This document shows positions 26,520-64,000 of a stretch of 64,000 bases of DNA, in pieces. Source of the stretch: Magallana gigas (lineage: Eukaryota); NCBI RefSeq assembly GCF_963853765.1, contig NC_088858.1, positions 50,654,001 through 50,718,000 on the forward strand, given 5' to 3'. Made by a program: the position numbers and the translations under genes. The notes beneath the pieces are model-generated. The model searched no databases. It saw only the letters and a program-made list of their open reading frames with translations, and had not been told where the DNA came from. Each line of letters begins with the position of its first letter. Position 1 is the first letter of the stretch.

Positions 26520-26522
<3 letters not shown>

Positions 26523-29325: not shown

Positions 29326-31595
29326 ATTAAACGGAAGTTGTCAAATGAAATCACTGATATGTATCAATTGAATTGTAGATAGGGTAATTTTTTTGAAAGG
29401 TAGTTTTCATTTGTTGTTGTTTTTTAATTCTTTAAATCGACTCTCTTAAATGATATCTGATTTGTAGTACATATCATAATTATCAAAAGTTGAATTCAAT
29501 AACATGCTTGTCAATATGTGAACGTTTACTTTTCTAATGGCCACTTGCTGCTTTCATAGTCATCATATTATGTACTGTATGATTTTAAAGAATAACGATC
29601 GAAATTTTGATACATGAAAATATGTATAATGAAGGGGGAATCCAATATTCTTCTTTTTCAGTGTATTGTGTGTACGTTTAATATAGACATATAGTTTATA
29701 TAATGTCTTATGATATAGGTAAGTTCAAATAGAAAGTTTGATTAATATTTGTGACTAAAAATTTAAATAAAACATTTTTTTTTCATTTTATCGTAGACAA
29801 AAGTTTTTCATTGAGAAATGATAAAAATGTTTGAAAATTAAGAAAATTATGTGAATAAAAATCGTACATATGTATTCAACATGATCCTCAACAAGAGTCG
29901 CTTATAATTAGCGGACGATCCTAATATTTTTTACGCCTGAAGAAAATAATTTTAGATTGGGGGAAGGGCATAACTTTACTTTTCTTTAATTATTTTCGAA
30001 GGGGGGGGGGGGCAACTAAGCAAAAACCCCTTCACAAACAAATAAAAACAATTGTTTCATTTAGAGGGCACAAGCATTAGAATATGTTTAATACAGTACT
30101 CTGTAGAAATCAGCAATATTATGGAGGGGGTCACACTGTATCAGCAATATTATTTGGATGGGGTATGTACATGTACATATGCGTATTCACTAGGAAAGTG
30201 TCCGATTCGTTTCTTCTTCCGTTGCCCTTCCATATTCGGTGTAAATATATATACGAAAGTATCCCCAAACAACTTACCTCAGATTTTTTATTTTTACTTG
30301 TTTCTGCACCATCGATCACCAGCTCAATACGGTTGCGTGGTTTCACTGGTTTGTTTACGCATAAAAACGACGGTTTTTGATCCGCTTTCCGAGTAAGCCT
30401 AAGGTTGTTTAATAGGAGAAACTTTGGGGCAAGTAAAGCTACAATTATTAACAGAAGAACTACATGTAACTGAATAATTTTTAAAATAAATTATTTGCAC
30501 AAAATGTGATTATGTTAATCTTTTTAAAACCAGCGTATTTTTTGTGCTGTAAATTGCAATTTTTTTCGTAAGTATCATATGCACTGTAGCTTTATATTTA
30601 CCTCCCCATATTTTCTTCGTAGAGCTTCAGCCATATGTACCGTATGTATGTTTTGTCACAAGTATGTACACTTTCGAAAAATACCCCAGTTCGACGGACA
30701 CGAGTAACCCGGTGAATTTTTCATTCTCTGATAATTTGTCGTGCATAATTTAGTCTGAACCAGCAGCCAACCAAGCATTAAGCAGAATCCACCGATAAAA
30801 AAGTTTGTGGTTAAGGCGCGGGTATTTTTTATGCACGAAGTAGCTGTTAGAATTGAACGCGACGCCATCGATAAAAGTCAACCAAATCGGTTTTAATAAC
30901 ATTTATATAATTTTAAGCAATTAAACAATTAAATATCTGAATATAAATAAGGAAACCCCGCATGCGCCTCAATTATATGTTATTTGAATTTATTGGGCTG
31001 AATAGTAAAAAATAGATACGCAGTGTTATCACAGGCAACGACACTGAAAAATGTAAATATTTAATATAAAAAATAACATGAAAAAATGAATTATTTGAAA
31101 ATCTGACGTAGTCTTCTTGCTCATGACGTTGCATAGAGCAACGTCAAAATGATGCTACGTTATCGCAAAGTATACTGCATTTACCTTTCAGTAAAACATA
31201 AACAAAGCTTTAAACAGTTATAAATTGGTGATTTTATGAAAATATACCCTCTGTAAAAGTATTTTGAGGAACATTATCTAAGTTGGACATGGGGCCGAAA
31301 TTGACCCCAAACGCACTTGGTCCTTTGAAGAGGATTGTAAAGATTGTAATATTTTGAAAATCATACTTTTCAAAACTTTTTCTCCACCATTAGCTTAAAA
31401 TGAGAAAAAAAAATCAGTCGTCGTCTTTAAGCCAACTGGGCCCTCAATACCTTGATTTTAAATTTATCAATCAAAAAGATTTCCAATGAAAAAGTAAGAA
31501 AATACCTGAAGTATCGGATAATTTTCTTATTAGATTTTTTACTAAGCTGTTTTTACCTTGCCTAGCCTGTTATGGCCAAGTCCTTTTCCGTAAAG

Positions 31596-32009
31596 TCAGC
31601 CGTACACCCTTTTTCTCGGCAGTCTGTTTTCAACCAGAACTTTTCCGTACCCTCCCAAAAACAGATCGTTTCGAGGAAGAACACCATACAATTCCTTTCC
31701 ATAGAGTCCACCATACAGAACATTCTTTCTATTTGTTCCTGTTTCAATCACACCTTTTCCGTACGATCCTCTATACAGTTCGCTCCCAATAAGATCACCA
31801 TACAATTCCTTTCCATAGGGTCCACCATATAGAACATTCTTTTCATTTATTCTTGTTCCAATCAGACCTTTTCCGTACAATCTACCATACAGTTCGCCGC
31901 TCCCAATGAGATCACCATACAATGTGTTTCTACCATAGAGACTGTTTGTTTTGTATCCATAGCAAAAGGCCACAGAAAAAAGGACCACAAAAAAGATCAG
32001 TCGGATCAT
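31596..32009 (-). pseudogene. Gly/Tyr-rich gene copy B with in-frame premature TGA (137 aa; ancestral stop TAG at 31542-31544)
   Basis: Reads ..GTG TAC GGC TGA CTT TAC GGA AAA GGA.. and continues in frame as LYGKGLGHNRLGKVKTA*, homologous to the tails of the other copies. Confidence 0.75.
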
Positions 32010-35000
32010 CTAGAACAGAAATATTGATTGATCTTATTTCAAAATTAGGACTATTTGATTCATTTGGTATTAAGAAAAAATTAACATACGTCAATAATGA
32101 AATTTAAAATAAAGCAATTTGGCCTACCTTGCTGATAAACAAAAAGGATTTGGTAAAGATCCTGTGTGTTTAAAGCTCAATGTGCAGGGGTATATATACT
32201 AACATTCACGTAAAAGACAACCAAATATCATCAATAAAAACAGTCGTAATAACCACAATGTGACACAACTCCTACGAACATTAAACATTGAAAGAAATAA
32301 TTCATCACAGGAGGCCATAGTAAAAAAAAAAAAAGCAATACGAATTTATAAATTTGAAAAATAAGACAGGGTCATCGAGATTACGGAGCAAAAAACAGTC
32401 ATTAAGGTAATTGATTTATTCTACATATTGTGGTCCTCGTCGTCCCTAATTGACAATCATGATTTAATGTACTATTTCTTGGTATCATTATCATTATAAA
32501 TTTTCCAGTTTGAGTTCGACATATGCATGTCATTAGTTGATATTTAAATCAATGTTAAAGCTCATAAAAACATAGATTAGTTATTTAATTTCTAATTTTA
32601 CTATTTTTATAAGCTCAATAAAGTAGAGAATAATTACATAAACAAAAATTATGCGTAATAAAGACTATACACATATATGGATATACAAATTTAATTCATA
32701 CGTGTGGTTATACTACTCGTGTGAGAAACCTTTGCTTTATCACACGGGCGATGCTTCATCAATACTTCCGGTCCGAACTAATTTTGACATAGCCCTCGCT
32801 TAAACGCTTCAGCGACCTATTTTCGAAGATTTGCAAGTACTTTCAACATAATTGTATCTACTACCAAAAATTAAAATATAATGGATTTTGTCAAAGATTT
32901 AAATTACAAATATGAAAGAAAACACATAACTGTTAGGCATAAGCGTCAGAACCGGAACCGGAGGAGAGGGGGTTTTAGGGGGAGGTTATACATAACCGTA
33001 ACCAAAGACTTTTCGTTTTTTGCTTGTCGAAACTTTTGATAAGTTTAGCCCACCACCCCCTTTCAATTTGCTTCCAGCGCCACTATCTGGTTTTTAAAAC
33101 TCCAAATCACTTAATCTATAAAGGAGTACATCCTGACGACGCGATGAAAACAGAACGTTTTGGTTGTGTTTATATACAAGAATGCACAGAAAATAAAGTT
33201 TTTAAAGACTTTTATTCCACCACCAGTAAGCATCCTAACTCAATATTTTCAATTTCAAATCATTAAGCTACAATTTGTTTTATAAATCATCAACAGCTGT
33301 TCCTCGTTCGAGTCAATTCAAACTAACGAGCATTCGCAACTTTCTGAATGTCAACAAACTTGATTCTTCGAGTCGTCTGATCAGTATTTCAATTAAATCA
33401 AGTGATTATGCTCTAAGAAATATTATTAAGAGCTGAAAATATTTTTCAAGGTTTATTTTAGTTTGACTTTACATTTAAACAGATAGATTGATCTTCGAAA
33501 TGACGTTCTAAATTGCATTGCGCATGGACATAGTAACTGCTTAACAAAGGTCAAATGTATGAGATAAATAGAACATCTATAATTGTGTGATTTATTTTAC
33601 ATTTGCTTTAAAATTATCCAACCAGTTGAAATGGTTATATTTGTTCTGCAAGACTTGCGAATATATACACCATTTCAACTTGCTGGATAAAGCAAATATA
33701 AAATCTCAAAATATAGATATCCTCTATATATTTGCAAAAATGTAAACATAAGCATGTATACCATCATTGTTTATATACATGCAATGAGACTGGGATTATT
33801 GAAGAGGATAGATAGAGAAAGGGGGTGAGAAAATGGGCCTTGGATAGAGGTTTTGGTATATGGATTTATTTTTATGGTAAAAAAAAACACTGGACAAAGA
33901 AAGATTTCGAAATGATACTTTTATGACTTTCTTATAGTAAGAAACAATTATAATTTAGTACTGATATGTTGGCAGTGTCTTCCATATTAATAATTACCAC
34001 AGTGTTTTAGTAATAAATATTTCTATTATTGTTTTCTCTAGACAACGAAACTATAGGGGGTAATCTGGTGTTTGCTAAATACAAGTTTCTTTCTTTCTTC
34101 TGTCATTTTGCAAAGTCGCCAGACGACTCGTTACCAATTCAATACCATTTCGAAGAAATCTCTGTCATGCATTGGAATAAAAAATACAAATCACATTCCT
34201 ATGGTATAAAGGAGGTGCTACAACAGCTTCTATCAATAGCATTTCAGATGGTCAAATTAAAGAACCTGGGCGCTGGAAGTCAAGAGCTTATAAGTGCTTA
34301 GTAAATGTACCAACCTCAAAGTCAATCTATAATTGAAATGTTAAAGTGTGTACCTTTTTTCTTGCAGCTTACTTGATTTTTGTATGTTGTCTGATCATAA
34401 TGGTGTGCACAGAAATGTTGACTTGTTTATTTTGATTGTGTTTATATATATTTATTCTTTCAGAAGGTGTTGGATCTTCAATTATTTGCCATGCATTCGG
34501 TTATGCTAGGATGAATGGGGGATCCAATCTTGAGTTTCTCCCATAGAAGCTATCATAAAGTTGCAGGGAAAAGACGGCATGTGATGGCGACATGTCCTCT
34601 CCTAAATCAGGCAATTGTTACGGTATTGGTACGGCATTGTCTGGTTTATCATTGTGAAGGTAATGACATTGGTAAGATAAAATGTTTTGAATTGTGCGAG
34701 ATAATGGAGAAATCTTTGAATGCTCTTTCTTGAATGTTGCGAAGAACGAAAATCATGTGGTCACAAATACTGCCAAAACCAACATGGCGTAAGACTAGAA
34801 ACAATAATGCTCTCAATAAGACAAGAGTGTGAGTTAAAAGCTTTGGTGCTACAAGAATCTTGGAACACCATGGAAGCTATGTTCGCTATCTAAAGATAGC
34901 TTCAACTGACCAAAGCTTATTTAGGGCCTATGGTTGCATTAGAAAGAAAATAAAATTGTCCTAGCCTTATAACTAAGAAAAGTTTTATGTCGTCTGGTGT

Positions 35001-36815
35001 ACGAGTTAACCCTTTGGCTTAGGGTAATGACCATGGCACACACTTTATTCTTAGCCAAATACCAATCATTAACTAAACATTCTAAATTCTTAGACTATGA
35101 TTTTCTAAAACATTTTAGTATTCATCTTAATGATAGTGTTCAGCTGTTGTCTTTAAGGCGGCAAACACTTCGTGTCCATATGGCACAATCTTTAGCTAAA
35201 CTTGAATAGGGTTATATTTAGTGAGCATCTGGTCCTATGGCTCGCTGCAACTCTTATCTTCAATTTGCTTCTTTGTTAAAATTAGATATGTTTGATTCTC
35301 CAGTATCGGTTTAACAGCTTTATATGTATACTTCAATATTTCTGGTTTATTTGCATACTTCAAGTGCATTTCCATTTACATGTATTTGCCATTTGGTTGC
35401 TATTATCCTTTTTTACATGGGTCGGTAACCTTGCTTACAAATACAAATGTAACCAGTCAATGATTGTTAAAGTAAAAGCAAAATGTAACTCAAATGAATC
35501 ATCTCTGCGTAAAGAATTTGAAAATTATATCATATTGTTGATAATTCAGTAAATCGATCAATGCTCCTGAGTTGCATAGTGAATGATTCCAAAGAGAAAT
35601 ATCTTTTCAATGCAACGAAATCAATATTTTTTAAATTTTCGTGCCTTTCATCTTTAAATACATTTTGTTTGAATGTTTTGACATATCAATTCCCGGGAAA
35701 ACTATAACACGGTCTTCAAATTAAATACAGGTTAAATACCACAAACAACACGTGTGATAAATCTCAATACTAAGCAACGAAATAGACTGATAAAACAAAG
35801 TCTGAGTTTTTCCCTTCCATGATTTATTTGGTGTGTTAATCATTCAAAGACAGTTATAAAGTACAATGTACAGATGTAGTTTCCTGGGACGTCAAATGAG
35901 ATTGGAACCATTAATAGTAACCCTGTAAAAAAGGAGATTTATTAATGTAAAATGCATGCACCATCCTTAAATTTATTATAGAATACATTGGCACGATATC
36001 AGTTCTTGCACGATATAGGATGTTCAGTAATATTAAGGTACATGTATACACTATATTATTTTCATTTCGTTGACTAGAAATAATAGTGCTTTGGTTGGAA
36101 CATAAGCAAATCAGTTATAAGCACATTAAAATTATTTATCACAGTATTTCTTTTTCCAGAAAATTATAATATATCAATGATTGCAAACTGGTCTAATATG
36201 ATCTTAACGGATAACAATGTAATTATCAAAATGCCAAAAAAGTAACCTTTACAGAAGAAAAAGGCTGGACAGTTCATAATTAATTGATTAACAATTGAAG
36301 CATTTTGATTGCAGATTATTCTCAACAAAACGGTATTATATATTCTAAAAACATAAAAATATTTTTTAAGATTAGAAATATTCCACAGCGTCAGAAGTTT
36401 TGATTTTAAAAGAGCATTTATGTGGTATATAATGTCATGTGATCCTCATACTTTTAAAATATGACGGTCTGAAAGATGGAGGCAACGTATTTCATACATA
36501 ACTCTTACATTGGCAGGTTACATGTTTTGATCAGAAACTATATACAGTTTACCAAATATAGTAAACAAAGCTAAATCATCGTATACTCTTAAAAGAAAAA
36601 AATTGAAGAGGATTGTAAAGATTGTAACATTTTGAAAATCATAATTTTCAAATCTTTTTCTCTACCACAAGTTAAAAATGAAAAAAAAGTCGTTGACTAT
36701 AAATCAGCTGGGCCCTCACACCTTGATTTTAAATATATCAATCAAAAAGATTTTCAATGAAAAAGAAATAAATACCGGTATGAGTATCGGATAGTTTTCT
36801 TATTAGAATTTTTTA

Positions 36816-37280
36816 CTAAGCTTTTTTTTTTACCTCGCCTAGCCTGCTATGGCCAAGTCCTCTTCCGTACACCCCTTTTCTTGGCAGTCTGTTTTCAACC
36901 AGAACTTTTCCGTACCCTCCCAAAAACAGATCGTTTCGAGGAAGATCGCCGTACAATTGCTTTCCATAGAGTCCACCATACAGAACATTCTTTCTATTTG
37001 TTCTCGTTTCAATCAGACCTTTTCCGTACGATCCTCCATACAGTTCGCTCCCAATAAGATCACCATACAATTCATTTCCATAGGGTCCACCAAAGTGACC
37101 ATAGAGACCATTCCTTTTATTTGTTCTTATTTCAATCAGACCTTTTCCGTACGATCCTCCATACAGTTCGCTCCCAATAAGATCACCATACAATGTGTTT
37201 CTATCATAGAGACTGTTTGTTTTGTATCCATAGCAAAAGGCCACAGAAAAAAGGACCACAAAAAAGATCAGTCGGATCAT
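36816..37280 (-). CDS. Gly/Tyr-rich secreted protein, copy C1 (154 aa; G26D and Y63F relative to C2)
   Basis: Same signal peptide, repeats and tail ..GEVKKKA. Confidence 0.88.
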   Translation of the reverse strand: MIRLIFFVVLFSVAFCYGYKTNSLYDRNTLYGDLIGSELYGGSYGKGLIEIRTNKRNGLYGHFGGPYGNELYGDLIGSELYGGSYGKGLIETRTNRKNVLYGGLYGKQLYGDLPRNDLFLGGYGKVLVENRLPRKGVYGRGLGHSRLGEVKKKA

Positions 37281-37398
37281 CTAGAACAGAAATATTGATT
37301 GATCTTATTTCAAAATAAGGACCATTTGATTCATTTGGTATTAAGAAAAAATTAACATACGTCAATAATGAAATTTAAAATAAAGCAATTTGGCCTAC

Positions 37399-37470
37399 CT
37401 TGCTGATAAACAAAAAGGACTTGGTATAAGATACTGTGTGCTTATGGCTCAATGTGCAGGGGTATATATA
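37399..37470 (-). promoter_or_regulatory. TATA box (37463-37470) and non-coding exon 1 (3' end 37399) of C1; repeated in each unit
   Basis: GTATATATAC upstream of donor CAGCAAG|GTAGG; 118-nt intron to TTCTAG|ATG. Confidence 0.65.
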
Positions 37471-38203
37471 CTAACAGTCACGTAAAAGACAACCAAATAT
37501 CATCAATAAAAACAGTCGTAATAACCACAATGTGACACAACTCCAACGAACATTAAACATTGAAAGAAATAATTCATCACAGGAGGCCATAGTAAAAAAA
37601 AAAACAATACTAATTGATAAATTTGAAAAATTAGACAGGGTCATCGAGATTACGGAGCAAAAATAGTCATTAAGGTAATTGTTTTATTCTACATATTGTG
37701 GTCCTCGTTTGTCCCTAATTGACAATCATGATTTAATGTACTATTTCTTGGTATCATTATCATTATAAATTTTCCAGTTTGAGTTCGATTTATGCATATC
37801 ATTAGTTGGTATTTAAATCAATGTTAAAGCTCATAAAAACATAGATTAGTTATTAAATTTCTAATTTCACTATTTTTATAAGCTCAATATAGTAGAGAAT
37901 AATGACATAAACAAAAATTATGCGTAATAAAGACTATACACATATATGGATATACAAATTTAATTCATACGTGTGGTTATACTACTCGTGTGAGAAACCT
38001 TTGCTTTATCACACGGGCGATGCTTCATCAATACTTCCGGTCCGAACTAATTTTGACATAGCCCTCGCTGAAACGCTTCAGCGACCTATTTTCGAAAATT
38101 TGCTTGTACTTTCAACATAATTATATCTACTACCAAAAATTAAAATATAATGGATTTTGTCAAAGATTTAAATTACAAATATGAAAGAAAACACATAACT
38201 GTT

Positions 38204-38363
38204 AGGCATAAGCGTCAGAACCGGAACCGGAGGAGGGGGTGGGGGGGGGGAGATTAGGGGGAGGTTATACATAACCGTAACCAAAGACTTTTCGTTTTTT
38301 GCTTGTCGAAACTTTTGATAAGTTTAGCCCACCACCCCCTTTCAATTTGCTTCCAGCGCCACT
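38204..38363. mobile_element. Small G/C-tract element carried once per unit (representative copy)
   Basis: AGGCATAAGCGTCAGAACC..(G)n..TTTCAATTTGCTTCCAGCGCCACT; weakly inverted ends; related to 2497-2855. Confidence 0.45.
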
Positions 38364-41300: not shown

Positions 41301-42096
41301 ATGTTCAGTAATATTAAGGTACATGTATACACTATATTATTTTCATTTCGTTGACTAGAAATAATAGTGCTTTGGTTGGAACATAAGCAAATCAGTTATA
41401 AGCACATTAAAATTATTTATCACAGTATTTCTTTTTCCAGAAAATTATAATATATCAATGATTGCAAACTGGTCTAATATGATCTTAACGGATAACAATG
41501 TAATTATCAAAATGCCAAAAAAGTAACCTTTACAGAAGAAAAAGGCTGGACAGTTCATAATTAATTGATTAACAATTGAAGCATTTTGATTGCAGATTAT
41601 TCTCAACAAAACGGTATTATATATTCTAAAAACATAAAAATATTTTTTAAGATTAGAAATATTCCACAGCGTCAGAAGTTTTGATTTTAAAAGAGCATTT
41701 ATGTGGTATATAATGTCATGTGATCCTCATACTTTTAAAATATGACGGTCTGAAAGATGGAGGCAACGTATTTCATACATAACTCTTACATTGGCAGGTT
41801 ACATGTTTTGATCAGAAACTATATACAGTTTACCAAATATAGTAAACAAAGCTAAATCATCGTATACTCTTAAAAGAAAAAAATTGAAGAGGATTGTAAA
41901 GATTGTAACATTTTGAAAATCATAATTTTCAAATCTTTTTCTCTACCACAAGTTAAAAATGAAAAAAAAGTCGTTGACTATAAATCAGCTGGGCCCTCAC
42001 ACCTTGATTTTAAATATATCAATCAAAAAGATTTTCAATGAAAAAGAAATAAATACCGGTATGAGTATCGGATAGTTTTCTTATTAGAATTTTTTA

Positions 42097-42561
42097 CTAA
42101 GCTTTTTTTTTTACCTCGCCTAGCCTGCTATGGCCAAGTCCTCTTCCGTACACCCCTTTTCTTGGCAGTCTGTTTTCAACCAGAACTTTTCCGTACCCTC
42201 CCAAAAACAGATCGTTTCGAGGAAGATCGCCGTACAATTGCTTTCCATAGAGTCCACCATACAGAACATTCTTTCTATTTGTTCTCGTTTCAATCAGACC
42301 TTTTCCGTACGATCCTCCATACAGTTCGCTCCCAATAAGATCACCATACAATTCATTTCCATAGGGTCCACCATAGTGACCATAGAGACCATTCCTTTTA
42401 TTTGTTCTTATTTCAATCAGACCTTTTCCGTACGATCCTCCATACAGTTCGCTCCCAATAAGATCACCATACAATGTGTTTCTACCATAGAGACTGTTTG
42501 TTTTGTATCCATAGCAAAAGGCCACAGAAAAAAGGACCACAAAAAAGATCAGTCGGATCAT
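42097..42561 (-). CDS. Gly/Tyr-rich secreted protein, copy C2 (154 aa)
   Basis: Intact ORF; tail GEVKKKA (A10 run). Confidence 0.88.
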   Translation of the reverse strand: MIRLIFFVVLFSVAFCYGYKTNSLYGRNTLYGDLIGSELYGGSYGKGLIEIRTNKRNGLYGHYGGPYGNELYGDLIGSELYGGSYGKGLIETRTNRKNVLYGGLYGKQLYGDLPRNDLFLGGYGKVLVENRLPRKGVYGRGLGHSRLGEVKKKA

Positions 42562-52646: not shown

Positions 52647-53126
52647 TTAGAATTTTTTACTAAGCTTTTTTTTTTTTACCTCGCCTAGCCTGCTATGGCC
52701 AAGTCCTCTTCCGTACACCCCTTTTCTTGGCAGTCTGTTTTCAACCAGAACTTTTCCGTACCCTCCCAAAAACAGATCGTTTCGAGGAAGATCGCCGTAC
52801 AATTGCTTTCCATAGAGTCCACCATACAGAACATTCTTTCTATTTGTTCTCGTTTCAATCAGACCTTTTCCGTACGATCCTCCATACAGTTCGCTCCCAA
52901 TAAGATCACCATACAATTCATTTCCATAGGGTCCACCATAGTGACCATAGAGACCATTCCTTTTATTTGTTCTTATTTCAATCAGACCTTTTCCGTACGA
53001 TCCTCCATACAGTTCGCTCCCAATAAGATCACCATACAATGTGTTTCTACCATAGAGACTGTTTGTTTTGTATCCATAGCAAAAGGCCACAGAAAAAAGG
53101 ACCACAAAAAAGATCAGTCGGATCAT
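52647..53126 (-). CDS. Gly/Tyr-rich secreted protein, copy C4 (159 aa, extended tail)
   Basis: A12 run shifts the frame to GEVKKKKLSKKF*. Confidence 0.85.
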   Translation of the reverse strand: MIRLIFFVVLFSVAFCYGYKTNSLYGRNTLYGDLIGSELYGGSYGKGLIEIRTNKRNGLYGHYGGPYGNELYGDLIGSELYGGSYGKGLIETRTNRKNVLYGGLYGKQLYGDLPRNDLFLGGYGKVLVENRLPRKGVYGRGLGHSRLGEVKKKKLSKKF

Positions 53127-56100
53127 CTAGAACAGAAATATTGATTGATCTTATTTCAAAATAAGGACCATTTGATTCATTTGGTATTAAGAAAAAATTA
53201 ACATACGTCAATAATGAAATTTAAAATAAAGCAATTTGGCCTACCTTGCTGATAAACAAAAAGGACTTGGTATAAGATACTGTGTGCTTATGGCTCAATG
53301 TGCAGGGGTATATATACTAACAGTCACGTAAAAGACAACCAAATATCATCAATAAAAACAGTCGTAATAACCACAATGTGACACAACTCCAACGAACATT
53401 AAACATTGAAAGAAATAATTCATCACAGTAGGCCATAGTAAAAAAAAAAAACAATACTAATTTATAAATTTGAAAAATTAGACAGGGTCATCGAGATTAC
53501 GGAGCAAAAAATAGTCATTAAGGTAATTGTTTTATTCTACATATTGTGGTCCTCGTTTGTCCCTAATTGACAATCATGATTTAATGTACTATTTCTTGGT
53601 ATCATTATCATTATAATTTTTCCAGTTTGAGTTCGATTTATGCATGTCATTAGTTGGTATTTAAATCAATGTTAAAGCTCATAAAAACATAGATTAGTTA
53701 TTAAATTTCTAATTTCACTATTTTTATAAGCTCAATATAGTAGAGAATAATGACATAAACAAAAATTATGCGTAATAAAGACTATACACATATATGGATA
53801 TACAAATTTAATTCATACGTGTGGTTATACTACTCGTGTGAGAAACCTTTGCTTTATCACACGGGCGATGCTTCATCAATACTTCCGGTCCGAACTAATT
53901 TTGACATAGCCCTCGCTGAAACGCTTCAGCGACCTATTTTCGAAAATTTGCTTGTACTTTCAACATAATTATATCTACTACCAAAAATTAAAATATAATG
54001 GATTTTGTCAAAGATTTAAATTACAAATATGAAAGAAAACACATAACTGTTAGGCATAAGCGTCCGGAACCGGAGGAGGGGGTGGGGGGGGGGGAGATTA
54101 GGGGGAGGTTATACATAACCGTAACCAAAGACTTTTCGTTTTTTGCTTGTCGAAACTTTTGATAAGTTTAGCCCACCACCCCCTTTCAATTTGCTTCCAG
54201 CGCCACTATGTGGTTTTTAAAACTCCTAATCACTTAATCTATCAAGGAGTACATCCTGACGACGCGATGAAAACAGAACGTTTTGGTTGTGTTTATATAC
54301 AAGAATGCACAGAAAATAAAGTTTTTAAAGACTTTTATTCCACCACCAATAAGCATCCTAACTCAATATTTTCCATTTTAAATCATTAAGCTACAATTTG
54401 TTTTATAAATCATCAACAGCTGTTCCTCGTTCGAGTCAATTCAAACTAACGAGCATTCGCAACTTTCTGAATGTCAACAAACTTGATTCTTCGAGTCGTC
54501 TGATCAGTATTTCAATTAAATCAAGTGATTATGCTCTAAGAAATATTATTAAGAGCTTAAAATATTTTTCAAGGTTTATTTTAGTTTGACTTTACATTTA
54601 AACAGATAGATTGATCTTCGAAATGACGTTCTAAATTGCATTGCGCATGGACATAGTAACTGCTTAACAAAGGTCAAATGTATGAGATAAATAGAACATC
54701 TATATTGTGTGATTTATTTTACATTTGCTTTAAAATTATCCAACTAGTTGAAATGGTTATATTTGTTCTGCAAGACTTGCGAATATATACACCATTTCAA
54801 CTTGCTGGATAAAGCAAATATAAAATCTCAAAATATAGATATCCTCTATATATTTGCAAAAATGTAAACATAAGCATGTATACCATCATTGTTTATATAC
54901 ATGCAATGAGACTGGGATTATTGAAGAGGATAGATAGAGAAAGGGGGTGAGAAAATGGGCCTTGGATAGAGGTTTGGGTATATGGATTTATTTTTATGGT
55001 AAAAAAAAAAACACTGGACAAAGAAAGATTTCGAAATGATACTTTTATGACTTTCTTATAGTAAGAAACAATTATAATTTAGTACTGATATGTTGCCAGT
55101 GTCTTCCATATTAATAATTACCACAGTGTTTTAGTAATAAATATTTCTATTATTGTTTTCTCTAGACAACGAAACTATAGGGGGTAATCTGGTGTTTGCT
55201 AAATACAAGTTTCTTTCTTTCTTCTGTCATTTTACAAAGTCGCCAGACGACTCGTTACCAATTCAATATCATTTCGAAGAAATCTCTGTCATGCATTGGA
55301 GTAAAAAATACAAATCATATTCCTTTGGTATAAAGGAGGTGCTACAACAGCTTCTATCAATAGCATTTCAGATGGTCAAATTAAAGAACCTGGGCGCTGG
55401 AAGTCAAGAGCTTATAAGTGCTTAGTAAATGTACCAACCTCAAAGTCAATCTATTATTGAAATGTTAAAGTGTGTACCTTTTTTCTTGCAGCTTACTTGA
55501 TTTTTTGTATGTTGTCTGATCATAATGGTGTGCACAGAAATGTTGACTTGTTTATTTTGATTGTGTTTATATATATTTATTCTTTCAGAAGGTGTTGGAT
55601 CTTCAATTATTTGGCATGCATTCGGTTATGCTAGGATGAATGGGGGATCCAATCTTGAGTTTCTCCCATAGAAGCTATCATAAAGTTGCAGGGAAAAGAC
55701 GGCATGTGATGGCGACATGTCCTCTCCTAAATCAGGCAATTGTTACGGTATTGGTACGGCATTGTCTGGTTTATCATTGTGAAGGTAATGACATTGGTAA
55801 GATAAAATGTTTTGAATTGTGCGAAATAATGGAGAAATCTTTGAATGCTCTTTCTTGAATGTTGCCAAGAACGAAAATCATGTGGTCACACATACTGCCA
55901 AAACCAACATGGCGTAAGACTAGAAACAATAATGCTCTCAATAAGACAAGAGTGTGAGTTAAAAACTTTGGTGCTACAGGAATCTTGGAACACCATGGAG
56001 GCTATGTTCGCTGTCTAAAGATAGCTTCATCTGACCAAAGCTTATTTAGGGCCTATGGTTGCATTAGAAAGAAAATAAAATTGTCCTAGCCTTATAACTA

Positions 56101-57929
56101 AGAAAAGTTTTATGTCGTCAGGTGTACGAGTTAACCCTTTGGCTTAGGGTAATGACCATGGCACACACTTTATTCTTAGCCAAATACCAATCATTAACTA
56201 AACATTCTAAATTCTTAGACTATGATTTTCTAAAACATTTTAGTATTCATCTTAATGATAGTGTTCAGCTGTTGTCTTTAAGGCGGCAAACACTTCGTGT
56301 CCATATGGCACAATCTTTAGCTAAACTTGAATAGGGTTATATTTAGTGAGCATCTGGTCCTATGGCTCGCTGCAACTCTTATCTTCAATTTGCTTCTTTG
56401 TTAAAATTAGATATGTTTGATTCTCCAGTATCGGTTTAACAGCTTTGTATGTATACTTCAATATTTCTGGTTTATTTGCATACTTCAAGTGCATTTCCAT
56501 TTACATGTATTTGCCATTTGGTTGCTATTATCCTTTTTTACATGGGTCGGTAACCTTGCTTACAAATACAAATGTAACCAGTCAATGATTGTTAAAGAAA
56601 AAGCAAAATGTAACTCAAATGAATCATCTCTGCGTAAAGAATTTGAAAATTATATCATATTGTTGATAATTCAGTAAATCGATCAATGCTCCTGAGTTGC
56701 ATAGTGAATGATTCCAAATAGAAATATCCTTTCAATGCAACGAAATCAATATTTTTTAAATTTTCGTGCCTTTCATCTTTTAATACATTTTGTTTGAATG
56801 TTTTGACATATCAATTCCCGGGAAAACTATAACACGGTCTTCAAATTAAATACAGGTTAAATACCACAAACAACACGTGTGATAAATCTCAATACTAAGC
56901 AACGAAATAGACTGATAAAACAAAGTCTGAGTTTTTCCCTTCCATGATTTATTTGGTGTGTTAATCATTCAAAGACAGTTATAAAGTACAATGTACAGAT
57001 GTAGTTTCCTGGGACGTCAAATGAGATTGGAACCATTAATAGTAACCCTGTAAAAAAGGAGATTTATTAAAGTAAAATGCATGCACCATCCTTAAATTTA
57101 TTATAGAATACATTGGCACGATATCAGTTCTTGCACGATATAGGATGTTCAGTAATATTAAGGTACATGTATACACTATATTATTTTCATTTCGTTGACT
57201 AGAAATAATAGTGCTTTGGTTGGAACATAAGCAAATCAGTTATAAGCACATTAAAATTATTTATCACAGTATTTCTTTTTCCAGAAAATTATAATATATC
57301 AATGATTGCAAACTGGTCTAATATGATCTTAACGGATAACAATGTAATTATCAAAATGCCAAAAAAGTAACCTTTACAGAAGAAAAAAGCTGGACAGTTC
57401 ATAATTAATTGATTAACAATTGAAGCATTTTGATTGCAGATTATTCTCAACAAAACGGTATTATATATTCTAAAAACATAAAAATATTTTTTAAGATTAG
57501 AAATATTCCACAGCGTCAGAAGTTTTGATTTTAAAAGAGCATTTATGTGGTATATAATGTCTTGTGATCCTCATACTTTTAAAATATGACGGTCTGAAAG
57601 ATGGAGGCAACGTATTTCATACATAACTCTTACATTGGCAGGTTACATGTTTTGATCAGAAACTATATACAGTTTACCCAATATAGTAAACAAAGCTAAA
57701 TCATCGTATACTCTTAAAAGAAAAAAAATTGAAGAGGATTGTAAAGATTGTAACATTTTGAAAATCATAATTTTCAAATCTTTTTCTCTACCACAAGTTA
57801 AAAATAAAAAAAAAAGTCGTTGTCTATAAATCAGCTGGGCCCTCACACCTTGATTTTAAATATATCAATCAAAAAGATTTTCAATGAAAAAGAAATAAAT
57901 ACCGGTATGAGTATCGGATAATTTTCTTA

Positions 57930-58409
57930 TTAGAATTTTTTACTAAGCTTTTTTTTTTTTACCTCGCCTAGCCTGCTATGGCCAAGTCCTCTTCCGTACA
58001 CCCCTTTTCTTGGCAGTCTGTTTTCAACCAGAACTTTTCCGTACCCTCCCAAAAACAGATCGTTTCGAGGAAGATCGCCGTACAATTGCTTTCCATAGAG
58101 TCCACCATACAGAACATTCTTTCTATTTGTTCTCGTTTCAATCAGACCTTTTCCGTACGATCCTCCATACAGTTCGCTCCCAATAAGATCACCATACAAT
58201 TCATTTCCATAGGGTCCACCATAGTGACCATAGAGACCATTCCTTTTATTTGTTCTTATTTCAATCAGACCTTTTCCGTACGATCCTCCATACAGTTCGC
58301 TCCCAATAAGATCACCATACAATGTGTTTCTACCATAGAGACTGTTTGTTTTGTATCCATAGCAAAAGGCCACAGAAAAAAGGACCACAAAAAAGATCAG
58401 TCGGATCAT
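57930..58409 (-). CDS. Gly/Tyr-rich secreted protein, copy C5 (159 aa)
   Basis: Protein identical to C4; A12 run. Confidence 0.85.
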   Translation of the reverse strand: MIRLIFFVVLFSVAFCYGYKTNSLYGRNTLYGDLIGSELYGGSYGKGLIEIRTNKRNGLYGHYGGPYGNELYGDLIGSELYGGSYGKGLIETRTNRKNVLYGGLYGKQLYGDLPRNDLFLGGYGKVLVENRLPRKGVYGRGLGHSRLGEVKKKKLSKKF

Positions 58410-61400
58410 CTAGAACAGAAATATTGATTGATCTTATTTCAAAATAAGGACCATTTGATTCATTTGGTATTAAGAAAAAATTAACATACGTCAATAATGA
58501 AATTTAAAATAAAGCAATTTGGCCTACCTTGCTGATAAACAAAAAGGACTTGGTATAAGATACTGTGTGCTTATGGCTCAATGTGCAGGGGTATATATAC
58601 TAACAGTCACGTAAAAGACAACCAAATATCATCAATAAAAACAGTCGTAATAACCACAATGTGACACAACTCCAACGAACATTAAACATTGAAAGAAATA
58701 ATTCATCACAGTAGGCCATAGTAAAAAAAAAAAACAATACTAATTTATAAATTTGAAAAATTAGACAGGGTCATCGAGATTACGGAGCAAAAAATAGTCA
58801 TTAAGGTAATTGTTTTATTCTACATATTGTGGTCCTCGTTTGTCCCTAATTGACAATCATGATTTAATGTACTATTTCTTGGTATCATTATCATTATAAT
58901 TTTTCCAGTTTGAGTTCGATTTATGCATGTCATTAGTTGGTATTTAAATCAATGTTAAAGCTCATAAAAACATAGATTAGTTATTAAATTTCTAATTTCA
59001 CTATTTTTATAAGCTCAATATAGTAGAGAATAATTACATAAACAAAAATTATGCGTAATAAAGACTATACACATATATAGATATACAAATTTAATTCATA
59101 CGTGTGGTTATACTACTCGTGTGAGAAACCTTTGCTTTATCACACGGGCGATGCTTCATCAATACTTCCGGTCCGAACTAATTTTGACATAGCCCTCGCT
59201 GAAACGCTTCAGCGACCTATTTTCGAAAATTTGCTTGTACTTTCAACATAATTATATCTACTACCAAAAATTAAAATATAATGGATTTTGTCAAAGATTT
59301 AAATTACAAATATGAAAGAAAACACATAACTGTTAGGCATAAGCGTCAGAACCGGAACCGGAGGAGGGGGTGGGGGGGGGGGAGATTAGGGGGAGGTTAT
59401 ACATAACCGTAACCAAAGACTTTTCGTTTTTTGCTTGTCGAAACTTTTGATAAGTTTAGCCCACCACCCCCTTTCAATTTGCTTCCAGCGCCACTATGTG
59501 GTTTTTAAAACTCCTAATCACTTAATCTATCAAGGAGTACATCCTGACGACGCGATGAAAACAGAACGTTTTGGTTGTGTTTATATACAAGAATGCACAG
59601 AAAATAAAGTTTTTAAAGACTTTTATTCCACCACCAATAAGCATCCTAACTCAATATTTTCCATTTTAAATCATTAAGCTACAATTTGTTTTATAAATCA
59701 TCAACAGCTGTTCCTCGTTCGAGTCAATTCAAACTAACGAGCATTCGCAACTTTCTGAATGTCAACAAACTTGATTCTTCGAGTCGTCTGATCAGTATTT
59801 CAATTAAATCAAGTGATTATGCTCTAAGAAATATTATTAAGAGCTTAAAATATTTTTCAAGGTTTATTTTAGTTTGACTTTACATTTAAACAGATAGATT
59901 GATCTTCGAAATGACGTTCTAAATTGCATTGCGCATGGACATAGTAACTGCTTAACAAAGGTCAAATGTATGAGATAAATAGAACATCTATATTGTGTGA
60001 TTTATTTTACATTTGCTTTAAAATTATCCAACTAGTTGAAATGGTTATATTTGTTCTGCAAGACTTGCGAATATATACACCATTTCAACTTGCTGGATAA
60101 AGCAAATATAAAATCTCAAAATATAGATATCCTCTATATATTTGCAAAAATGTAAACATAAGCATGTATACCATCATTGTTTATATACATGCAATGAGAC
60201 TGGGATTATTGAAGAGGATAGATAGAGAAAGGGGGTGAGAAAATGGGCCTTGGATAGAGGTTTGGGTATATGGATTTATTTTTATGGTAAAAAAAAAAAC
60301 ACTGGACAAAGAAAGATTTCGAAATGATACTTTTATGACTTTCTTATAGTAAGAAACAATTATAATTTAGTACTGATATGTTGCCAGTGTCTTCCATATT
60401 AATAATTACCACAGTGTTTTAGTAATAAATATTTCTATTATTGTTTTCTCTAGACAACGAAACTATAGGGGGTAATCTGGTGTTTGCTAAATACAAGTTT
60501 CTTTCTTTCTTCTGTCATTTTACAAAGTCGCCAGACGACTCGTTACCAATTCAATATCATTTCGAAGAAATCTCTGTCATGCATTGGAGTAAAAAATACA
60601 AATCATATTCCTTTGGTATAAAGGAGGTGCTACAACAGCTTCTATCAATAGCATTTCAGATGGTCAAATTAAAGAACCTGGGCGCTGGAAGTCAAGAGCT
60701 TATAAGTGCTTAGTAAATGTACCAACCTCAAAGTCAATCTATTATTGAAATGTTAAAGTGTGTACCTTTTTTCTTGCAGCTTACTTGATTTTTTGTATGT
60801 TGTCTGATCATAATGGTGTGCACAGAAATGTTGACTTGTTTATTTTGATTGTGTTTATATATATTTATTCTTTCAGAAGGTGTTGGATCTTCAATTATTT
60901 GGCATGCATTCGGTTATGCTAGGATGAATGGGGGATCCAATCTTGAGTTTCTCCCATAGAAGCTATCATAAAGTTGCAGGGAAAAGACGGCATGTGATGG
61001 CGACATGTCCTCTCCTAAATCAGGCAATTGTTACGGTATTGGTACGGCATTGTCTGGTTTATCATTGTGAAGGTAATGACATTGGTAAGATAAAATGTTT
61101 TGAATTGTGCGAAATAATGGAGAAATCTTTGAATGCTCTTTCTTGAATGTTGCCAAGAACGAAAATCATGTGGTCACACATACTGCCAAAACCAACATGG
61201 CGTAAGACTAGAAACAATAATGCTCTCAATAAGACAAGAGTGTGAGTTAAAAACTTTGGTGCTACAGGAATCTTGGAACACCATGGAGGCTATGTTCGCT
61301 GTCTAAAGATAGCTTCATCTGACCAAAGCTTATTTAGGGCCTATGGTTGCATTAGAAAGAAAATAAAATTGTCCTAGCCTTATAACTAAGAAAAGTTTTA

Positions 61401-63216
61401 TGTCGTCAGGTGTACGAGTTAACCCTTTGGCTTAGGGTAATGACCATGGCACACACTTTATTCTTAGCCAAATACCAATCATTAACTAAACATTCTAAAT
61501 TCTTAGACTATGATTTTCTAAAACATTTTAGTATTCATCTTAATGATAGTGTTCAGCTGTTGTCTTTAAGGCGGCAAACACTTCGTGTCCATATGGCACA
61601 ATCTTTAGCTAAACTTGAATAGGGTTATATTTAGTGAGCATCTGGTCCTATGGCTCGCTGCAACTCTTATCTTCAATTTGCTTCTTTGTTAAAATTAGAT
61701 ATGTTTGATTCTCCAGTATCGGTTTAACAGCTTTGTATGTATACTTCAATATTTCTGGTTTATTTGCATACTTCAAGTGCATTTCCATTTACATGTATTT
61801 GCCATTTGGTTGCTATTATCCTTTTTTACATGGGTCGGTAACCTTGCTTACAAATACAAATGTAACCAGTCAATGATTGTTAAAGAAAAAGCAAAATGTA
61901 ACTCAAATGAATCATCTCTGCGTAAAGAATTTGAAAATTATATCATATTGTTGATAATTCAGTAAATCGATCAATGCTCCTGAGTTGCATAGTGAATGAT
62001 TCCAAATAGAAATATCCTTTCAATGCAACGAAATCAATATTTTTTAAATTTTCGTGCCTTTCATCTTTTAATACATTTTGTTTGAATGTTTTGACATATC
62101 AATTCCCGGGAAAACTATAACACGGTCTTCAAATTAAATACAGGTTAAATACCACAAACAACACGTGTGATAAATCTCAATACTAAGCAACGAAATAGAC
62201 TGATAAAACAAAGTCTGAGTTTTTCCCTTCCATGATTTATTTGGTGTGTTAATCATTCAAAGACAGTTATAAAGTACAATGTACAGATGTAGTTTCCTGG
62301 GACGTCAAATGAGATTGGAACCATTAATAGTAACCCTGTAAAAAAGGAGATTTATTAAAGTAAAATGCATGCACCATCCTTAAATTTATTATAGAATACA
62401 TTGGCACGATATCAGTTCTTGCACGATATAGGATGTTCAGTAATATTAAGGTACATGTATACACTATATTATTTTCATTTCGTTGACTAGAAATAATAGT
62501 GCTTTGGTTGGAACATAAGCAAATCAGTTATAAGCACATTAAAATTATTTATCACAGTATTTCTTTTTCCAGAAAATTATAATATATCAATGATTGCAAA
62601 CTGGTCTAATATGATCTTAACGGATAACAATGTAATTATCAAAATGCCAAAAAAGTAACCTTTACAGAAGAAAAAAGCTGGACAGTTCATAATTAATTGA
62701 TTAACAATTGAAGCATTTTGATTGCAGATTATTCTCAACAAAACGGTATTATATATTCTAAAAACATAAAAATATTTTTTAAGATTAGAAATATTCCACA
62801 GCGTCAGAAGTTTTGATTTTAAAAGAGCATTTATGTGGTATATAATGTCTTGTGATCCTCATACTTTTAAAATATGACGGTCTGAAAGATGGAGGCAACG
62901 TATTTCATACATAACTCTTACATTGGCAGGTTACATGTTTTGATCAGAAACTATATACAGTTTACCCAATATAGTAAACAAAGCTAAATCATCGTATACT
63001 CTTAAAAGAAAAAAATTGAAGAGGATTGTAAAGATTGTAACATTTTGAAAATCATAATTTTCAAATCTTTTTCTCTACCACAAGTTAAAAATAAAAAAAA
63101 AAGTCGTTGTCTATAAATCAGCTGGGCCCTCACACCTTGATTTTAAATATATCAATCAAAAAGATTTTCAATGAAAAAGAAATAAATACCGGTATGAGTA
63201 TCGGATAATTTTCTTA

Positions 63217-63696
63217 TTAGAATTTTTTACTAAGCTTTTTTTTTTTTACCTCGCCTAGCCTGCTATGGCCAAGTCCTCTTCCGTACACCCCTTTTCTTGG
63301 CAGTCTGTTTTCAACCAGAACTTTTCCGTACCCTCCCAAAAACAGATCGTTTCGAGGAAGATCGCCGTACAATTGCTTTCCATAGAGTCCACCATACAGA
63401 ACATTCTTTCTATTTGTTCTCGTTTCAATCAGACCTTTTCCGTACGATCCTCCATACAGTTCGCTCCCAATAAGATCACCATACAATTCATTTCCATAGG
63501 GTCCACCATAGTGACCATAGAGACCATTCCTTTTATTTGTTCTTATTTCAATCAGACCTTTTCCGTACGATCCTCCATACAGTTCGCTCCCAATAAGATC
63601 ACCATACAATGTGTTTCTACCATAGAGACTGTTTGTTTTGTATCCATAGCAAAAGGCCACAGAAAAAAGGACCACAAAAAAGATCAGTCGGATCAT
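63217..63696 (-). CDS. Gly/Tyr-rich secreted protein, copy C6 (159 aa)
   Basis: Protein identical to C4; A12 run. Confidence 0.85.
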   Translation of the reverse strand: MIRLIFFVVLFSVAFCYGYKTNSLYGRNTLYGDLIGSELYGGSYGKGLIEIRTNKRNGLYGHYGGPYGNELYGDLIGSELYGGSYGKGLIETRTNRKNVLYGGLYGKQLYGDLPRNDLFLGGYGKVLVENRLPRKGVYGRGLGHSRLGEVKKKKLSKKF

Positions 63697-64000
63697 CTAG
63701 AACAGAAATATTGATTGATCTTATTTCAAAATAAGGACCATTTGATTCATTTGGTATTAAGAAAAAATTAACATACGTCAATAATGAAATTTAAAATAAA
63801 GCAATTTGGCCTACCTTGCTGATAAACAAAAAGGACTTGGTATAAGATACTGTGTGCTTATGGCTCAATGTGCAGGGGTATATATACTAACAGTCACGTA
63901 AAAGACAACCAAATATCATCAATAAAAACAGTCGTAATAACCACAATGTGACACAACTCCAACGAACATTAAACATTGAAAGAAATAATTCATCACAGTA

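What the first reader, a model, noticed from the sequence alone, without database searches (positions are those of the whole stretch)
31326..64000. Recent, ongoing tandem amplification of a 5.28-kb single-gene unit
At least six full units lie head to tail, and those after 37280 differ only by scattered SNVs and homopolymer lengths, including in non-coding spacer. There is an age gradient from relic to A to B to the first unit to near-identical units. This implies recent unequal crossing-over and probable copy-number variation among individuals; for a structural protein, dosage selection is a plausible driver.
Basis: partly seen in the sequence, partly recalled or inferred. Interest (0 to 1): 0.72.

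Follow-up and report, generated by a model that had tools for sequence, protein, structure and literature searches.

The report
Recently amplified oyster orphan-gene tandem array
A 5.28-kb stretch carrying one small gene for a secreted glycine/tyrosine-rich protein is repeated head to tail seven times in this oyster genome but only about twice in a sister assembly. This is an ordinary kind of recent gene amplification, affecting an uncharacterised oyster-specific gene.

Summary
A 5,281-5,288-bp unit repeats head to tail from window 31,325. The array runs 5.5 kb past the window end, giving 7.2 periods in all. Units U1-U6 differ by 0-32 substitutions and 0-6 indels, and all but one indel are homopolymer lengths. 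Identity falls at both array edges and in older copies upstream (75-90%).

Each unit carries one three-exon gene on the minus strand. It encodes a 152-aa secreted, basic protein rich in Gly, Tyr and Leu, built from three 41-aa repeats. The family has relatives only in Crassostrea gigas and C. angulata.

The C. angulata assembly has the same locus with one full and one partial young unit, against six full and one partial here. It also lacks the 8.7-kb transposon that splits the upstream old unit here. The terminal units of the two genomes are orthologous at their outer 115 bp, but their bodies group by genome. That pattern fits unequal crossing-over after the two haplotypes split.

Copy number in the source individual could not be checked with reads. 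A structural role and dosage selection remain untested. This is a new example of a known process, of moderate interest.

The parts
13655..14225 (-). Oldest relic of the unit (unit positions 1455-2019, covering exon 3 and part of intron 2), 75% identical to the young unit.
16534..21195 (-). Old unit A, 87-90% identical to the young unit, from an array with a period of about 4.6 kb. It carries an intact gene copy: the open frame at 18584-19045 is 153 aa when read through into intron 2. Public contigs of other individuals match it at 98.8%.
20976..22600 (-). The 5' part of old unit B (unit positions 1-2129), 86-93% identical to the young unit and 99.2% identical to the C. angulata orthologue.
22601..31323 (.). 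An 8,723-bp transposon insertion that splits unit B. It is not part of the array. C. angulata has the exact empty site. The insertion encodes a DDE_Tnp_4 transposase at 27039-28406 and contains the N run at 23661-23813.
31324..34437 (-). Mosaic edge unit: the 3' part of B grading into the young sequence, from 88% to 100% identity to U3. Its gene copy at 31596-32009 is cut short to 137 aa by a TGA stop.
34438..39718 (-). Young unit U1 (5,281 bp), with 19 substitutions against U2 and U3. Its gene has two amino-acid changes (G26D and Y63F).
39719..44999 (-). Young unit U2 (5,281 bp), with 2 substitutions against U3.
45000..50280 (-). Young unit U3 (5,281 bp), the reference unit used here.
50281..55562 (-). 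Young unit U4 (5,282 bp), of the second unit class: 17 substitutions and 6 indels against U2 and U3.
55563..60850 (-). Young unit U5 (5,288 bp), with 0 substitutions and 2 homopolymer indels against U6.
60851..64000 (-). Young unit U6, cut by the window end. It continues to 66136 in window-equivalent coordinates and is followed by the terminal partial unit U7 (66137-69491, which is L031:2137-5491).
47961..48032 (-). Gene in U3: TATA-like box at 48032-48025 and the non-coding exon 1, which ends at 47961. The start site is predicted. The last 25 nt of exon 1 are seen in a spliced RNA contig.
47843..47960 (-). Intron 1 (118 nt, GT..AG), ending directly before the ATG. The spliced join is present in RNA run X15 (one contig) and X23 (one read) and absent from DNA run X2.
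47396..47842 (-). Exon 2: 149 codons, encoding the signal peptide and three 41-aa Gly/Tyr-rich repeats (the 123-bp DNA repeats at 47455-47773).
46485..47395 (-). Intron 2. It begins GT followed by a run of 10 A (12 in U4-U6). The mechanical ORF tails 'VKKKA*' and 'VKKKKLSKKF*' are read-through into this intron.
46365..46484 (-). Exon 3: GGT TAC TAT TAA, encoding GYY and the stop at 46475-46473. AATAAA lies at 46390-46385, and the 3' end of the exon is predicted.
48497..49571 (.). Dispersed non-autonomous repeat inside every young unit (unit positions 3498-4572). At least 40 scored copies across the genome are 74-81% identical. Its last ~170 bp match the other copies on both strands (palindromic).

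Best explanation
This is a real, young expansion at the distal end of an older tandem gene cluster on chromosome-scale contig C6 of an oyster of the Crassostrea (Magallana) gigas/angulata group.

The repeated unit is 5.28 kb. It holds one three-exon gene on the minus strand and one ~1.07-kb dispersed repeat. The gene encodes a 152-aa precursor: a signal peptide followed by a 134-aa basic protein (pI 9.5; G 23%, L 15%, Y 13%) built from three 41-aa repeats and ending in GYY.

The ancestral state, still seen in the C. angulata assembly, was one full young unit plus a terminal partial unit. Misaligned pairing between these copies, followed by unequal crossing-over or gene conversion, then produced six full units plus the terminal one on the window's haplotype. 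This happened in steps, leaving the sub-blocks U1, U2-U3 and U4-U6. The exchange kept unit bodies alike and left the array edges diverged.

Shown here: the array structure, the unit identities, the edge gradient, the copy difference between the two assemblies, the grouping of units by genome, and the splicing of intron 1.

Inferred: unequal crossing-over as the mechanism, real copy number in the source individual, and polymorphism among individuals.

The protein's role rests on composition alone. I think it most likely an extracellular matrix or other structural secreted protein that can be cross-linked through tyrosine, at about 50%.
For: - Period and identities.
- Nine open gene copies in one orientation, with seven identical or nearly identical proteins.
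- Gene model: canonical splice sites in the sequence. The C. angulata RefSeq models XP_052696487 and XP_052696537 are identical over residues 1-149 and end in GYY. The intron 1 join is seen in RNA and not in DNA.
- The C. angulata locus has two old units, one full young unit (98.7%) and one partial young unit (97.8%). It shares the same distal flank.
- Flank divergence between the two assemblies is 1.05%, against at most 0.6% among U1-U6.
- In unit positions 1-3240, 10 sites group U1-U7 against both C. angulata units and none group by position. In the last 115 bp, 18 sites group U7 with the C. angulata terminal unit. The tree gives (U1,(U2,U3)) 87/95, (U4,U5,U6) 93/89 and the two C. angulata units together 77/99.
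- The longest exact repeat inside the array is 3,664 bp, so accurate long reads can place every unit.
- The coding sequence is better conserved than its surroundings. A versus U3 is 95.2% in the CDS against about 88.5% in the flanks, with dN/dS 0.58.
- The family is confined to one cluster on C6.
Against: - No reads from the source individual were available, so the count of seven units rests on the assembly alone.
- The two-copy state in C. angulata could be a collapsed assembly.
- The one independent DNA run is Logan contigs, whose depths the tool itself says are not copy numbers.
- Grouping by genome has only moderate tree support for the C. angulata pair (77/99), and U7 is unresolved.
- Expression was barely detectable: two polyA/cDNA raw-read runs gave one spliced read in total, and one metatranscriptome gave contigs at depth 5-9. 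Function and dosage benefit are therefore open.
- dN/dS of 0.58 indicates only weak constraint.
Confidence: 0.68

Rival explanations
1. The array is old and fixed at about seven units in the species group, and gene conversion alone keeps it uniform. The two-unit C. angulata locus would then be a collapsed assembly, so there would be no recent amplification and no copy-number variation.
For: - Concerted evolution can make old arrays look young.
- The pattern of 10 sites grouping by genome shows homogenisation, which does not by itself require a change in copy number.
- Near-identical 5-kb repeats are a classic place for assemblies to collapse.
Against: - The C. angulata locus aligns colinearly through old unit, full unit, partial unit and 8.7 kb of shared distal flank, without a break.
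- The summed contig depth of the unit in an independent DNA run is only about 2-3.6 times that of the unique flank, not 7 (rough).
- The sub-block pattern, in which neighbouring units are most alike (2 differences for U2/U3 and 0-4 within U4-U6), is what stepwise local duplication predicts.
Confidence: 0.15
2. Assembly over-expansion: the individual has fewer units, and the assembler laid extra copies, or the two haplotypes' units, in tandem.
For: - Oyster genomes are 2.6-2.9% heterozygous (PMC10546077), and false duplications occur in such assemblies.
- U5 and U6 differ only at two homopolymer runs, which could be read errors.
- No reads of the source individual were examined.
Against: - The period is exact and no flank is duplicated.
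- The units fall into four distinguishable classes with fixed substitutions: U1, U2-U3, U4-U6 and U7.
- No exact repeat exceeds 3,664 bp, so accurate long reads place each unit.
- Differences between units (at most 0.6%) are well below the allelic divergence seen here: 1.05-1.3% against C. angulata and 1.2% against public contigs of copy A. The units therefore do not look like two haplotypes stacked together.
- The assembly's contiguity (564 Mb in 29 contigs) suggests accurate long reads. That is an inference.
Confidence: 0.12
3. Rival for the protein's function only. The gene may encode a precursor of several cationic Gly/Tyr-rich peptides (immune or antimicrobial, or signalling) released at the basic sites between repeats. 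Amplification would then serve defence and not structure.
For: - A signal peptide is followed by three repeats separated by KR, RK and RK pairs.
- The mature protein is basic, with pI 9.5.
- Small Gly/Tyr-rich cationic defence peptides encoded in gene clusters are known in other invertebrates (from my own knowledge, not tested here).
- RNA traces came from oyster metatranscriptome runs.
Against: - The dibasic pairs are not conserved in the 385-aa paralogue, where most repeats are separated by GKN or VKN.
- There is no homology to any known peptide family.
- No expression or induction data exist.
Confidence: 0.15

Closest known systems
Young tandem gene arrays and copy-number variants made by non-allelic homologous recombination (unequal crossing-over), as reported genome-wide in oysters. 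PMC10546077 cites copy-number variation in C. gigas and C. virginica.
   Same: Head-to-tail units in one orientation. Near-identity that includes non-coding DNA. Diverged edge units. Units that group by genome instead of by position. A different unit count in a closely related assembly.
   Different: The locus and its gene are not described in any paper found. Copy number among individuals was not measured here.
Gly/Tyr-rich shell matrix proteins of pearl oysters (shematrins and the KRMP family).
   Same: Signal peptide, high Gly and Tyr content, basic charge, short tandem repeats in the protein, and membership of a small clustered gene family. These comparisons rest on composition and on my own knowledge of those families.
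   Different: No sequence homology was detected. A phmmer search of 1.84 billion representatives found only this gene's own cluster and one low-complexity false hit, and Pfam gave nothing. The 41-aa 'LYG' repeat and the high Leu content are distinct. Presence in shell or mantle is untested.
Arthropod Gly/Tyr-rich cuticle proteins, the nearest ESM Atlas clusters.
   Same: Similar language-model features (score 0.81-0.84), reflecting composition.
   Different: The scores are below the tool's 0.9 threshold for anything beyond a lead, and recognition was low. There is no alignment-based support, so I treat this as compositional resemblance only.

Membership tests
Recent tandem amplification by unequal crossing-over (NAHR array) | Head-to-tail units, same orientation, constant period | tested here: met
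   Period 5,281-5,288 bp over 7.2 periods, with all gene copies on the minus strand.
Recent tandem amplification by unequal crossing-over (NAHR array) | Near-identity across coding and non-coding parts of the unit | tested here: met
   0-32 substitutions per 5.28 kb among U1-U6, and only 2 of the 36 variable sites fall in the coding exon 2.
Recent tandem amplification by unequal crossing-over (NAHR array) | Identity decays at the array edges | tested here: met
   The proximal mosaic unit rises from 88% to 100%. The last 115 bp of the distal unit differ from U1-U6 at about 18 sites.
Recent tandem amplification by unequal crossing-over (NAHR array) | Paralogues within a genome more alike than orthologues between genomes | tested here: met
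   10 sites group by genome and 0 by position in unit positions 1-3240. The tree places the two C. angulata units together at 77/99.
Recent tandem amplification by unequal crossing-over (NAHR array) | Unit divergence below orthologous or allelic divergence | tested here: met
   At most 0.6% among U1-U6, against 1.05% in the flank between assemblies.
Recent tandem amplification by unequal crossing-over (NAHR array) | Copy number differs between genomes or individuals | tested here: inconclusive
   Six full and one partial unit here, against one full and one partial in C. angulata GCA_025612915.2. Contig depth in one DNA run is about 2-3.6 times the flank, which is not a true copy number. No raw DNA reads were on offer.
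Recent tandem amplification by unequal crossing-over (NAHR array) | Copy number confirmed by reads of the assembled individual | not testable with these tools
   Only Logan contigs of DNA runs were available and read laying is capped at one call. Indirect support: no exact repeat longer than 3,664 bp.
Shematrin/KRMP-type Gly/Tyr-rich shell matrix proteins | N-terminal signal peptide with a Gly/Tyr-rich, basic, repetitive mature part | tested here: met
   Hydrophobic N-terminus MIRLIFFVVLFSVAFCYG. The mature part has G 23%, Y 13% and pI 9.5, with three 41-aa repeats. The rest is predicted disordered, at pLDDT about 30. No dedicated signal-peptide predictor was run.
Shematrin/KRMP-type Gly/Tyr-rich shell matrix proteins | Detectable sequence homology to family members | tested here: not met
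   phmmer against 1.84 billion representatives returned only the protein's own cluster and a false low-complexity hit. Pfam returned 0 families.
Shematrin/KRMP-type Gly/Tyr-rich shell matrix proteins | Mantle expression and presence in the shell proteome | not tested
   The tissues of the RNA runs are unknown and no proteome data were searched.
Multi-peptide precursor (antimicrobial or neuropeptide type) | Repeated peptides bounded by conserved dibasic cleavage sites | tested here: inconclusive
   KR, RK and RK pairs lie between the repeats of the 152-aa protein, but they are mostly absent between the repeats of the 385-aa paralogue.

The most novel reading that the evidence does not exclude
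The seven-copy array may be a segregating, lineage-specific copy-number variant of an oyster-restricted orphan gene. Its product, a tyrosine-cross-linkable secreted matrix protein or a cationic defence peptide precursor, would be dosage-limited. Copy number (2 versus 7 or more) would then underlie an adaptive difference between C. gigas/angulata lineages or farmed strains, for example in shell, periostracum or adhesive properties or in resistance.
Probability: 0.15. Interest if true: 0.6.

Novelty: new member of a known kind. Interest (0 to 1): 0.36.

Why it matters
Oysters are known for extreme structural and copy-number polymorphism, but few cases are resolved to the base.

This locus shows the whole history in one place. 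It has a relic, old units, a transposon-split unit, a mosaic edge and a young homogenised core. A sister assembly preserves the pre-expansion state and the empty transposon site.

That makes it a clean example for studying unequal crossing-over and concerted evolution in a highly heterozygous animal. The repeat-containing young unit can be told from the old units, so it offers a simple depth or PCR marker.

The amplified gene is a taxonomically restricted, secreted, repeat-built protein. If its dosage matters for shell, adhesion or defence, the array could be a useful marker in breeding. As it stands, it is an ordinary mechanism acting on an uncharacterised gene.

Tried and rejected
- **Known RNA families.** Rfam found nothing in the window.
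- **Pfam on the protein.** No family matched.
- **Word-indexed protein searches.** The 154-aa ORF found only its own 90% cluster and a two-repeat variant. The 385-aa paralogue gave no significant hit.
- **Exhaustive phmmer search.** The only hit outside the family was a Haliotis cytochrome P450 with a 'YDTSVGKKV' repeat insert. I rejected it as a low-complexity artefact.
- **ESM Atlas.** Only sub-threshold arthropod cuticle-protein clusters for the 154-aa ORF, and nothing usable for the paralogue.
- **AlphaFold2 on the 152-aa protein, single sequence.** Mean pLDDT was 38.8, with only the signal-peptide helix confident, so no fold search was run.
- **Literature search by RefSeq gene and protein identifiers.** No papers.
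- **Public contigs L041-L046 as transcript evidence.** Rejected. They are colinear with copy A through intron 1 and 500 nt upstream of the ATG, so they look genomic.
- **RNA raw reads.** Two runs of about 1.66 billion letters each gave one spliced read on the gene. This shows splicing but says nothing about expression level or tissue.
- **Depth-based copy number.** No raw DNA reads were offered. The Logan contig depths are reported only as a rough ratio.
- **U1-private substitutions as a conversion tract from the old units.** Only about 5 of 16 match old-unit alleles, so this was left open.
Full report
**1. The observation**

Tandem Repeats Finder shows the same 123-bp internal repeat recurring at 36893, 42174, 47455, 52739, 58022 and 63309, a spacing of 5,281-5,287 bp. 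A BLAST of the stretch 45000-50282 against the window gives full-length hits at 34438, 39719, 45000, 50281 and 55563. It also gives a 3.1-kb partial hit at 31325 (95.3%) and the first 3.15 kb of another unit at 60851.

Pairwise alignment gives 99.4-100% identity among the full units. Counted over whole units, that is 0-32 substitutions and 0-6 indel events per 5.28 kb. Of the seven indel sites, six are homopolymer-length changes and one is a 5-bp deletion in U4. Only 2 of the 36 variable sites lie in the coding exon.

Older copies lie upstream:
- a relic at 13655-14225 (75%)
- unit A at 16534-21195 (87-90%)
- the 5' part of unit B at 20976-22600 (86-93%)

The first array unit is a mosaic. Its identity to U3 climbs from 88% at 31325 to 99.5-100% by 33297.

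**2. Extent beyond the window**

The window is G000:C6:50654001-50718000, in a 564-Mb assembly of 29 contigs. I fetched 100 kb downstream. The array goes on for one more full junction and ends at window-equivalent 69491, which is L031:5491.

In total there are 7.2 periods:
- the mosaic edge unit
- six full young units (U1-U6)
- a terminal partial unit U7 (unit positions 1-3356)

An ~840-bp dispersed repeat and other inserted DNA follow. Diverged unit sequence resumes 6.3 kb further on.

**3. What each unit contains**

The only substantial open frame is on the minus strand. The sequence around it reads as follows, using U3 coordinates:
- a TATA-like box at 48032-48025
- a short non-coding exon ending at 47961
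- a 118-nt GT..AG intron ending directly before the ATG
- a 447-nt coding exon (47842-47396)
- a second intron beginning GAG|GT followed by 10-12 A
- an acceptor at 46486-46485, followed by GGT TAC TAT TAA
- AATAAA at 46390-46385

RefSeq models of C. angulata (XP_052696487 and XP_052696537, two adjacent genes 5,284 bp apart) are identical to the array protein over residues 1-149 and end in GYY. Their gene span is 1,371-1,373 bp, which matches this model.

The join across intron 1 was seen in an RNA contig of run X15 and in one raw read of run X23. It was absent from the DNA run X2.

The unit also holds a ~1.07-kb dispersed repeat at unit positions 3498-4572. No other gene is called in the C. 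angulata units. 'Single-gene unit' therefore holds.

**4. The protein**

The precursor is 152 aa. After a hydrophobic signal sequence, the 134-aa mature part is basic (pI 9.5) and has 23% Gly, 15% Leu and 13% Tyr. It is built from three 41-aa repeats.

AlphaFold2 on the single sequence is confident only for the signal helix. The rest has pLDDT near 30, consistent with a low-complexity, probably disordered chain.

Searches for relatives gave the following:
- Pfam finds nothing.
- The word-indexed search of 5.8 billion proteins finds only its own cluster and a two-repeat variant.
- An exhaustive phmmer search of 1.84 billion representatives adds only a false low-complexity hit in an abalone P450.
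- Named cluster members are all 'uncharacterized protein' of C. angulata or C. gigas, apart from one isoform (P0005) named PEX13, apparently on composition alone.
- In the genome, the family is confined to this cluster plus a 385-aa, nine-repeat paralogue 15 kb upstream of the window.

All nine copies in and next to the window are open, except that the B copy stops early at 137 aa. Copy A against U3 gives dN/dS 0.58. The coding sequence is 95.2% identical, against about 88.5% for the surrounding DNA, so constraint is weak but present.

**5. Comparison with a sister assembly**

The C. angulata locus (GCA_025612915.2, CM046778.1:52335840-52362494; L057 plus L058) was aligned to the young unit and to the extended window. 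It contains:
- two old units
- one full young unit (98.7%)
- one terminal partial unit (97.8%)
- the same distal insertion and flank

Three results follow.

First, the 8,723-bp insertion at 22601-31323 is absent there, at an exact empty site.

Second, the shared distal flank is 98.95% identical between the two assemblies. U1-U6 differ from one another by at most 0.6%. The expansion from one to six full units is therefore younger than the split of these two haplotypes.

Third, the site patterns fit unequal crossing-over. In unit positions 1-3240, ten sites separate all window units from both C. angulata units, and none separates units by position. In the last 115 bp of the terminal unit, 18 sites are shared by U7 and the C. 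angulata terminal unit, against all internal units. This is what misaligned full and terminal units would produce. The outermost segment cannot be exchanged and stays orthologous, while unit bodies are replaced within each lineage.

A maximum-likelihood tree gives (U1,(U2,U3)) 87/95, (U4,U5,U6) 93/89 and the two C. angulata units together at 77/99, with U7 unresolved. Neighbouring units are the most alike, as expected for stepwise local duplication.

**6. Is the copy number real and variable?**

No raw DNA reads were offered, so I could not test the source individual.

Intrinsic evidence favours a real array. The units fall into four distinguishable classes. The longest exact repeat anywhere in the array is 3,664 bp, so accurate long reads can place each unit. 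That this 29-contig assembly used such reads is an inference. Unit differences are also well below the allelic divergence seen here, so the units are not stacked haplotypes.

In one independent DNA run (X2, Logan contigs), summed contig depth over the unit is about 60-140, with a mean near 100. Over the unique flank it is 28-52. The ratio of about 2-3.6 is closer to the C. angulata state than to seven copies. The tool warns that such depths are not copy numbers, so I count this only as a hint.

For context, heterozygosity is 2.6-2.9% in these species, their divergence is estimated at 2.7-4.8 million years, and copy-number variation has been reported widely in C. gigas and C. virginica (PMC10546077).

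**7. Verdict**

The finding is a genuine, recent tandem amplification of a single-gene unit at the young end of an older array, most likely by unequal crossing-over. The pre-expansion state is preserved in a sister assembly.

Three points remain unproven:
- the copy number in the source individual
- polymorphism among individuals
- any selective or structural role of the protein

The mechanism is a textbook one and copy-number variation is common in oysters. The main interest is the clarity of the example and the orphan, repeat-built secreted protein involved.

**8. Notes on other first-stage findings**

The 'C-terminal isoform switch' noted by the scan (s1-375780) lies in the poly-A run directly after the intron 2 donor, so it is probably intronic.

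The 'hidden 8.7-kb transposon' (s1-375848) is confirmed by four observations:
- the empty site in C. angulata
- a DDE_Tnp_4 transposase ORF
- 99%-identical copies elsewhere in the genome
- a shared first base among those copies

Noticed in passing
window 22601-31323: An 8,723-bp insertion splits old unit B. The C. angulata assembly has the exact empty site (…CTTGAAA|TTTGAAG…), with no target-site duplication visible. The insertion encodes a DDE_Tnp_4 (PIF/Harbinger-type) transposase at 27039-28406 and a weak SWIM-like ORF at 28777-29325. Copies 99% identical, starting at the same first base, lie on C7 and C9, so it is a young, low-copy DNA transposon. The N run at 23661-23813 lies inside it and was left alone.
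   Followed up: partly
window 47384-47393 (A10) and 52666-52677 (A12), and the same place in each unit: The homopolymer that seems to switch the C-terminus (…EVKKKA* versus …EVKKKKLSKKF*) sits directly after a canonical GT donor (GAG|GTAAAA…). RefSeq models of the identical C. angulata gene splice from there to a tiny exon encoding GYY*. The two 'isoform classes' are therefore most likely an intronic length polymorphism. Splicing of intron 2 was not seen directly in RNA here.
   Followed up: partly
G000:C6:50637914-50639023, about 15 kb upstream of the window (L056:673-1830, minus strand): A 385-aa paralogue with the same kind of signal peptide and nine 41-aa repeats (…NGLYGGxYGSEVYGDILGKDLYGGLNGKGLIEIRTNGK…). 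It is the only other family member in the genome. Neither its exact sequence nor any significant relative was found in the public protein collections.
   Followed up: partly
L031:5505-6346 (window-equivalent 69505-70346): A dispersed repeat of about 840 bp, with many copies 93-97% identical, abuts the distal end of the array. Together with other sequence it forms a 6.3-kb block, after which diverged unit sequence (unit positions 3271-3689, 80.6%) resumes at 75765. C. angulata has the same arrangement, so it predates the expansion.
   Followed up: partly
protein P0007 (Logan contig, 139 aa): A public short-read contig encodes a chimera: an A-type N-terminal half joined to a B/array-type C-terminal half with the B-type early stop. 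It is either a real recombinant paralogue in another individual or a chimeric short-read contig.
   Followed up: no
protein P0005 (XP_052701658.1, C. angulata): One RefSeq isoform of the A-type gene is named 'probable peroxisomal membrane protein PEX13'. This looks like a name transferred on Gly/Tyr-rich composition alone. Pfam found no family in the array-type ORF, which is about 91% identical.
   Followed up: no
window 34700-35660 (unit positions 263-1219 of U1): Fifteen of the U1-private substitutions cluster in about 1 kb of the unit. About five match old-unit alleles. This may be a retained older tract or a conversion tract.
   Followed up: partly
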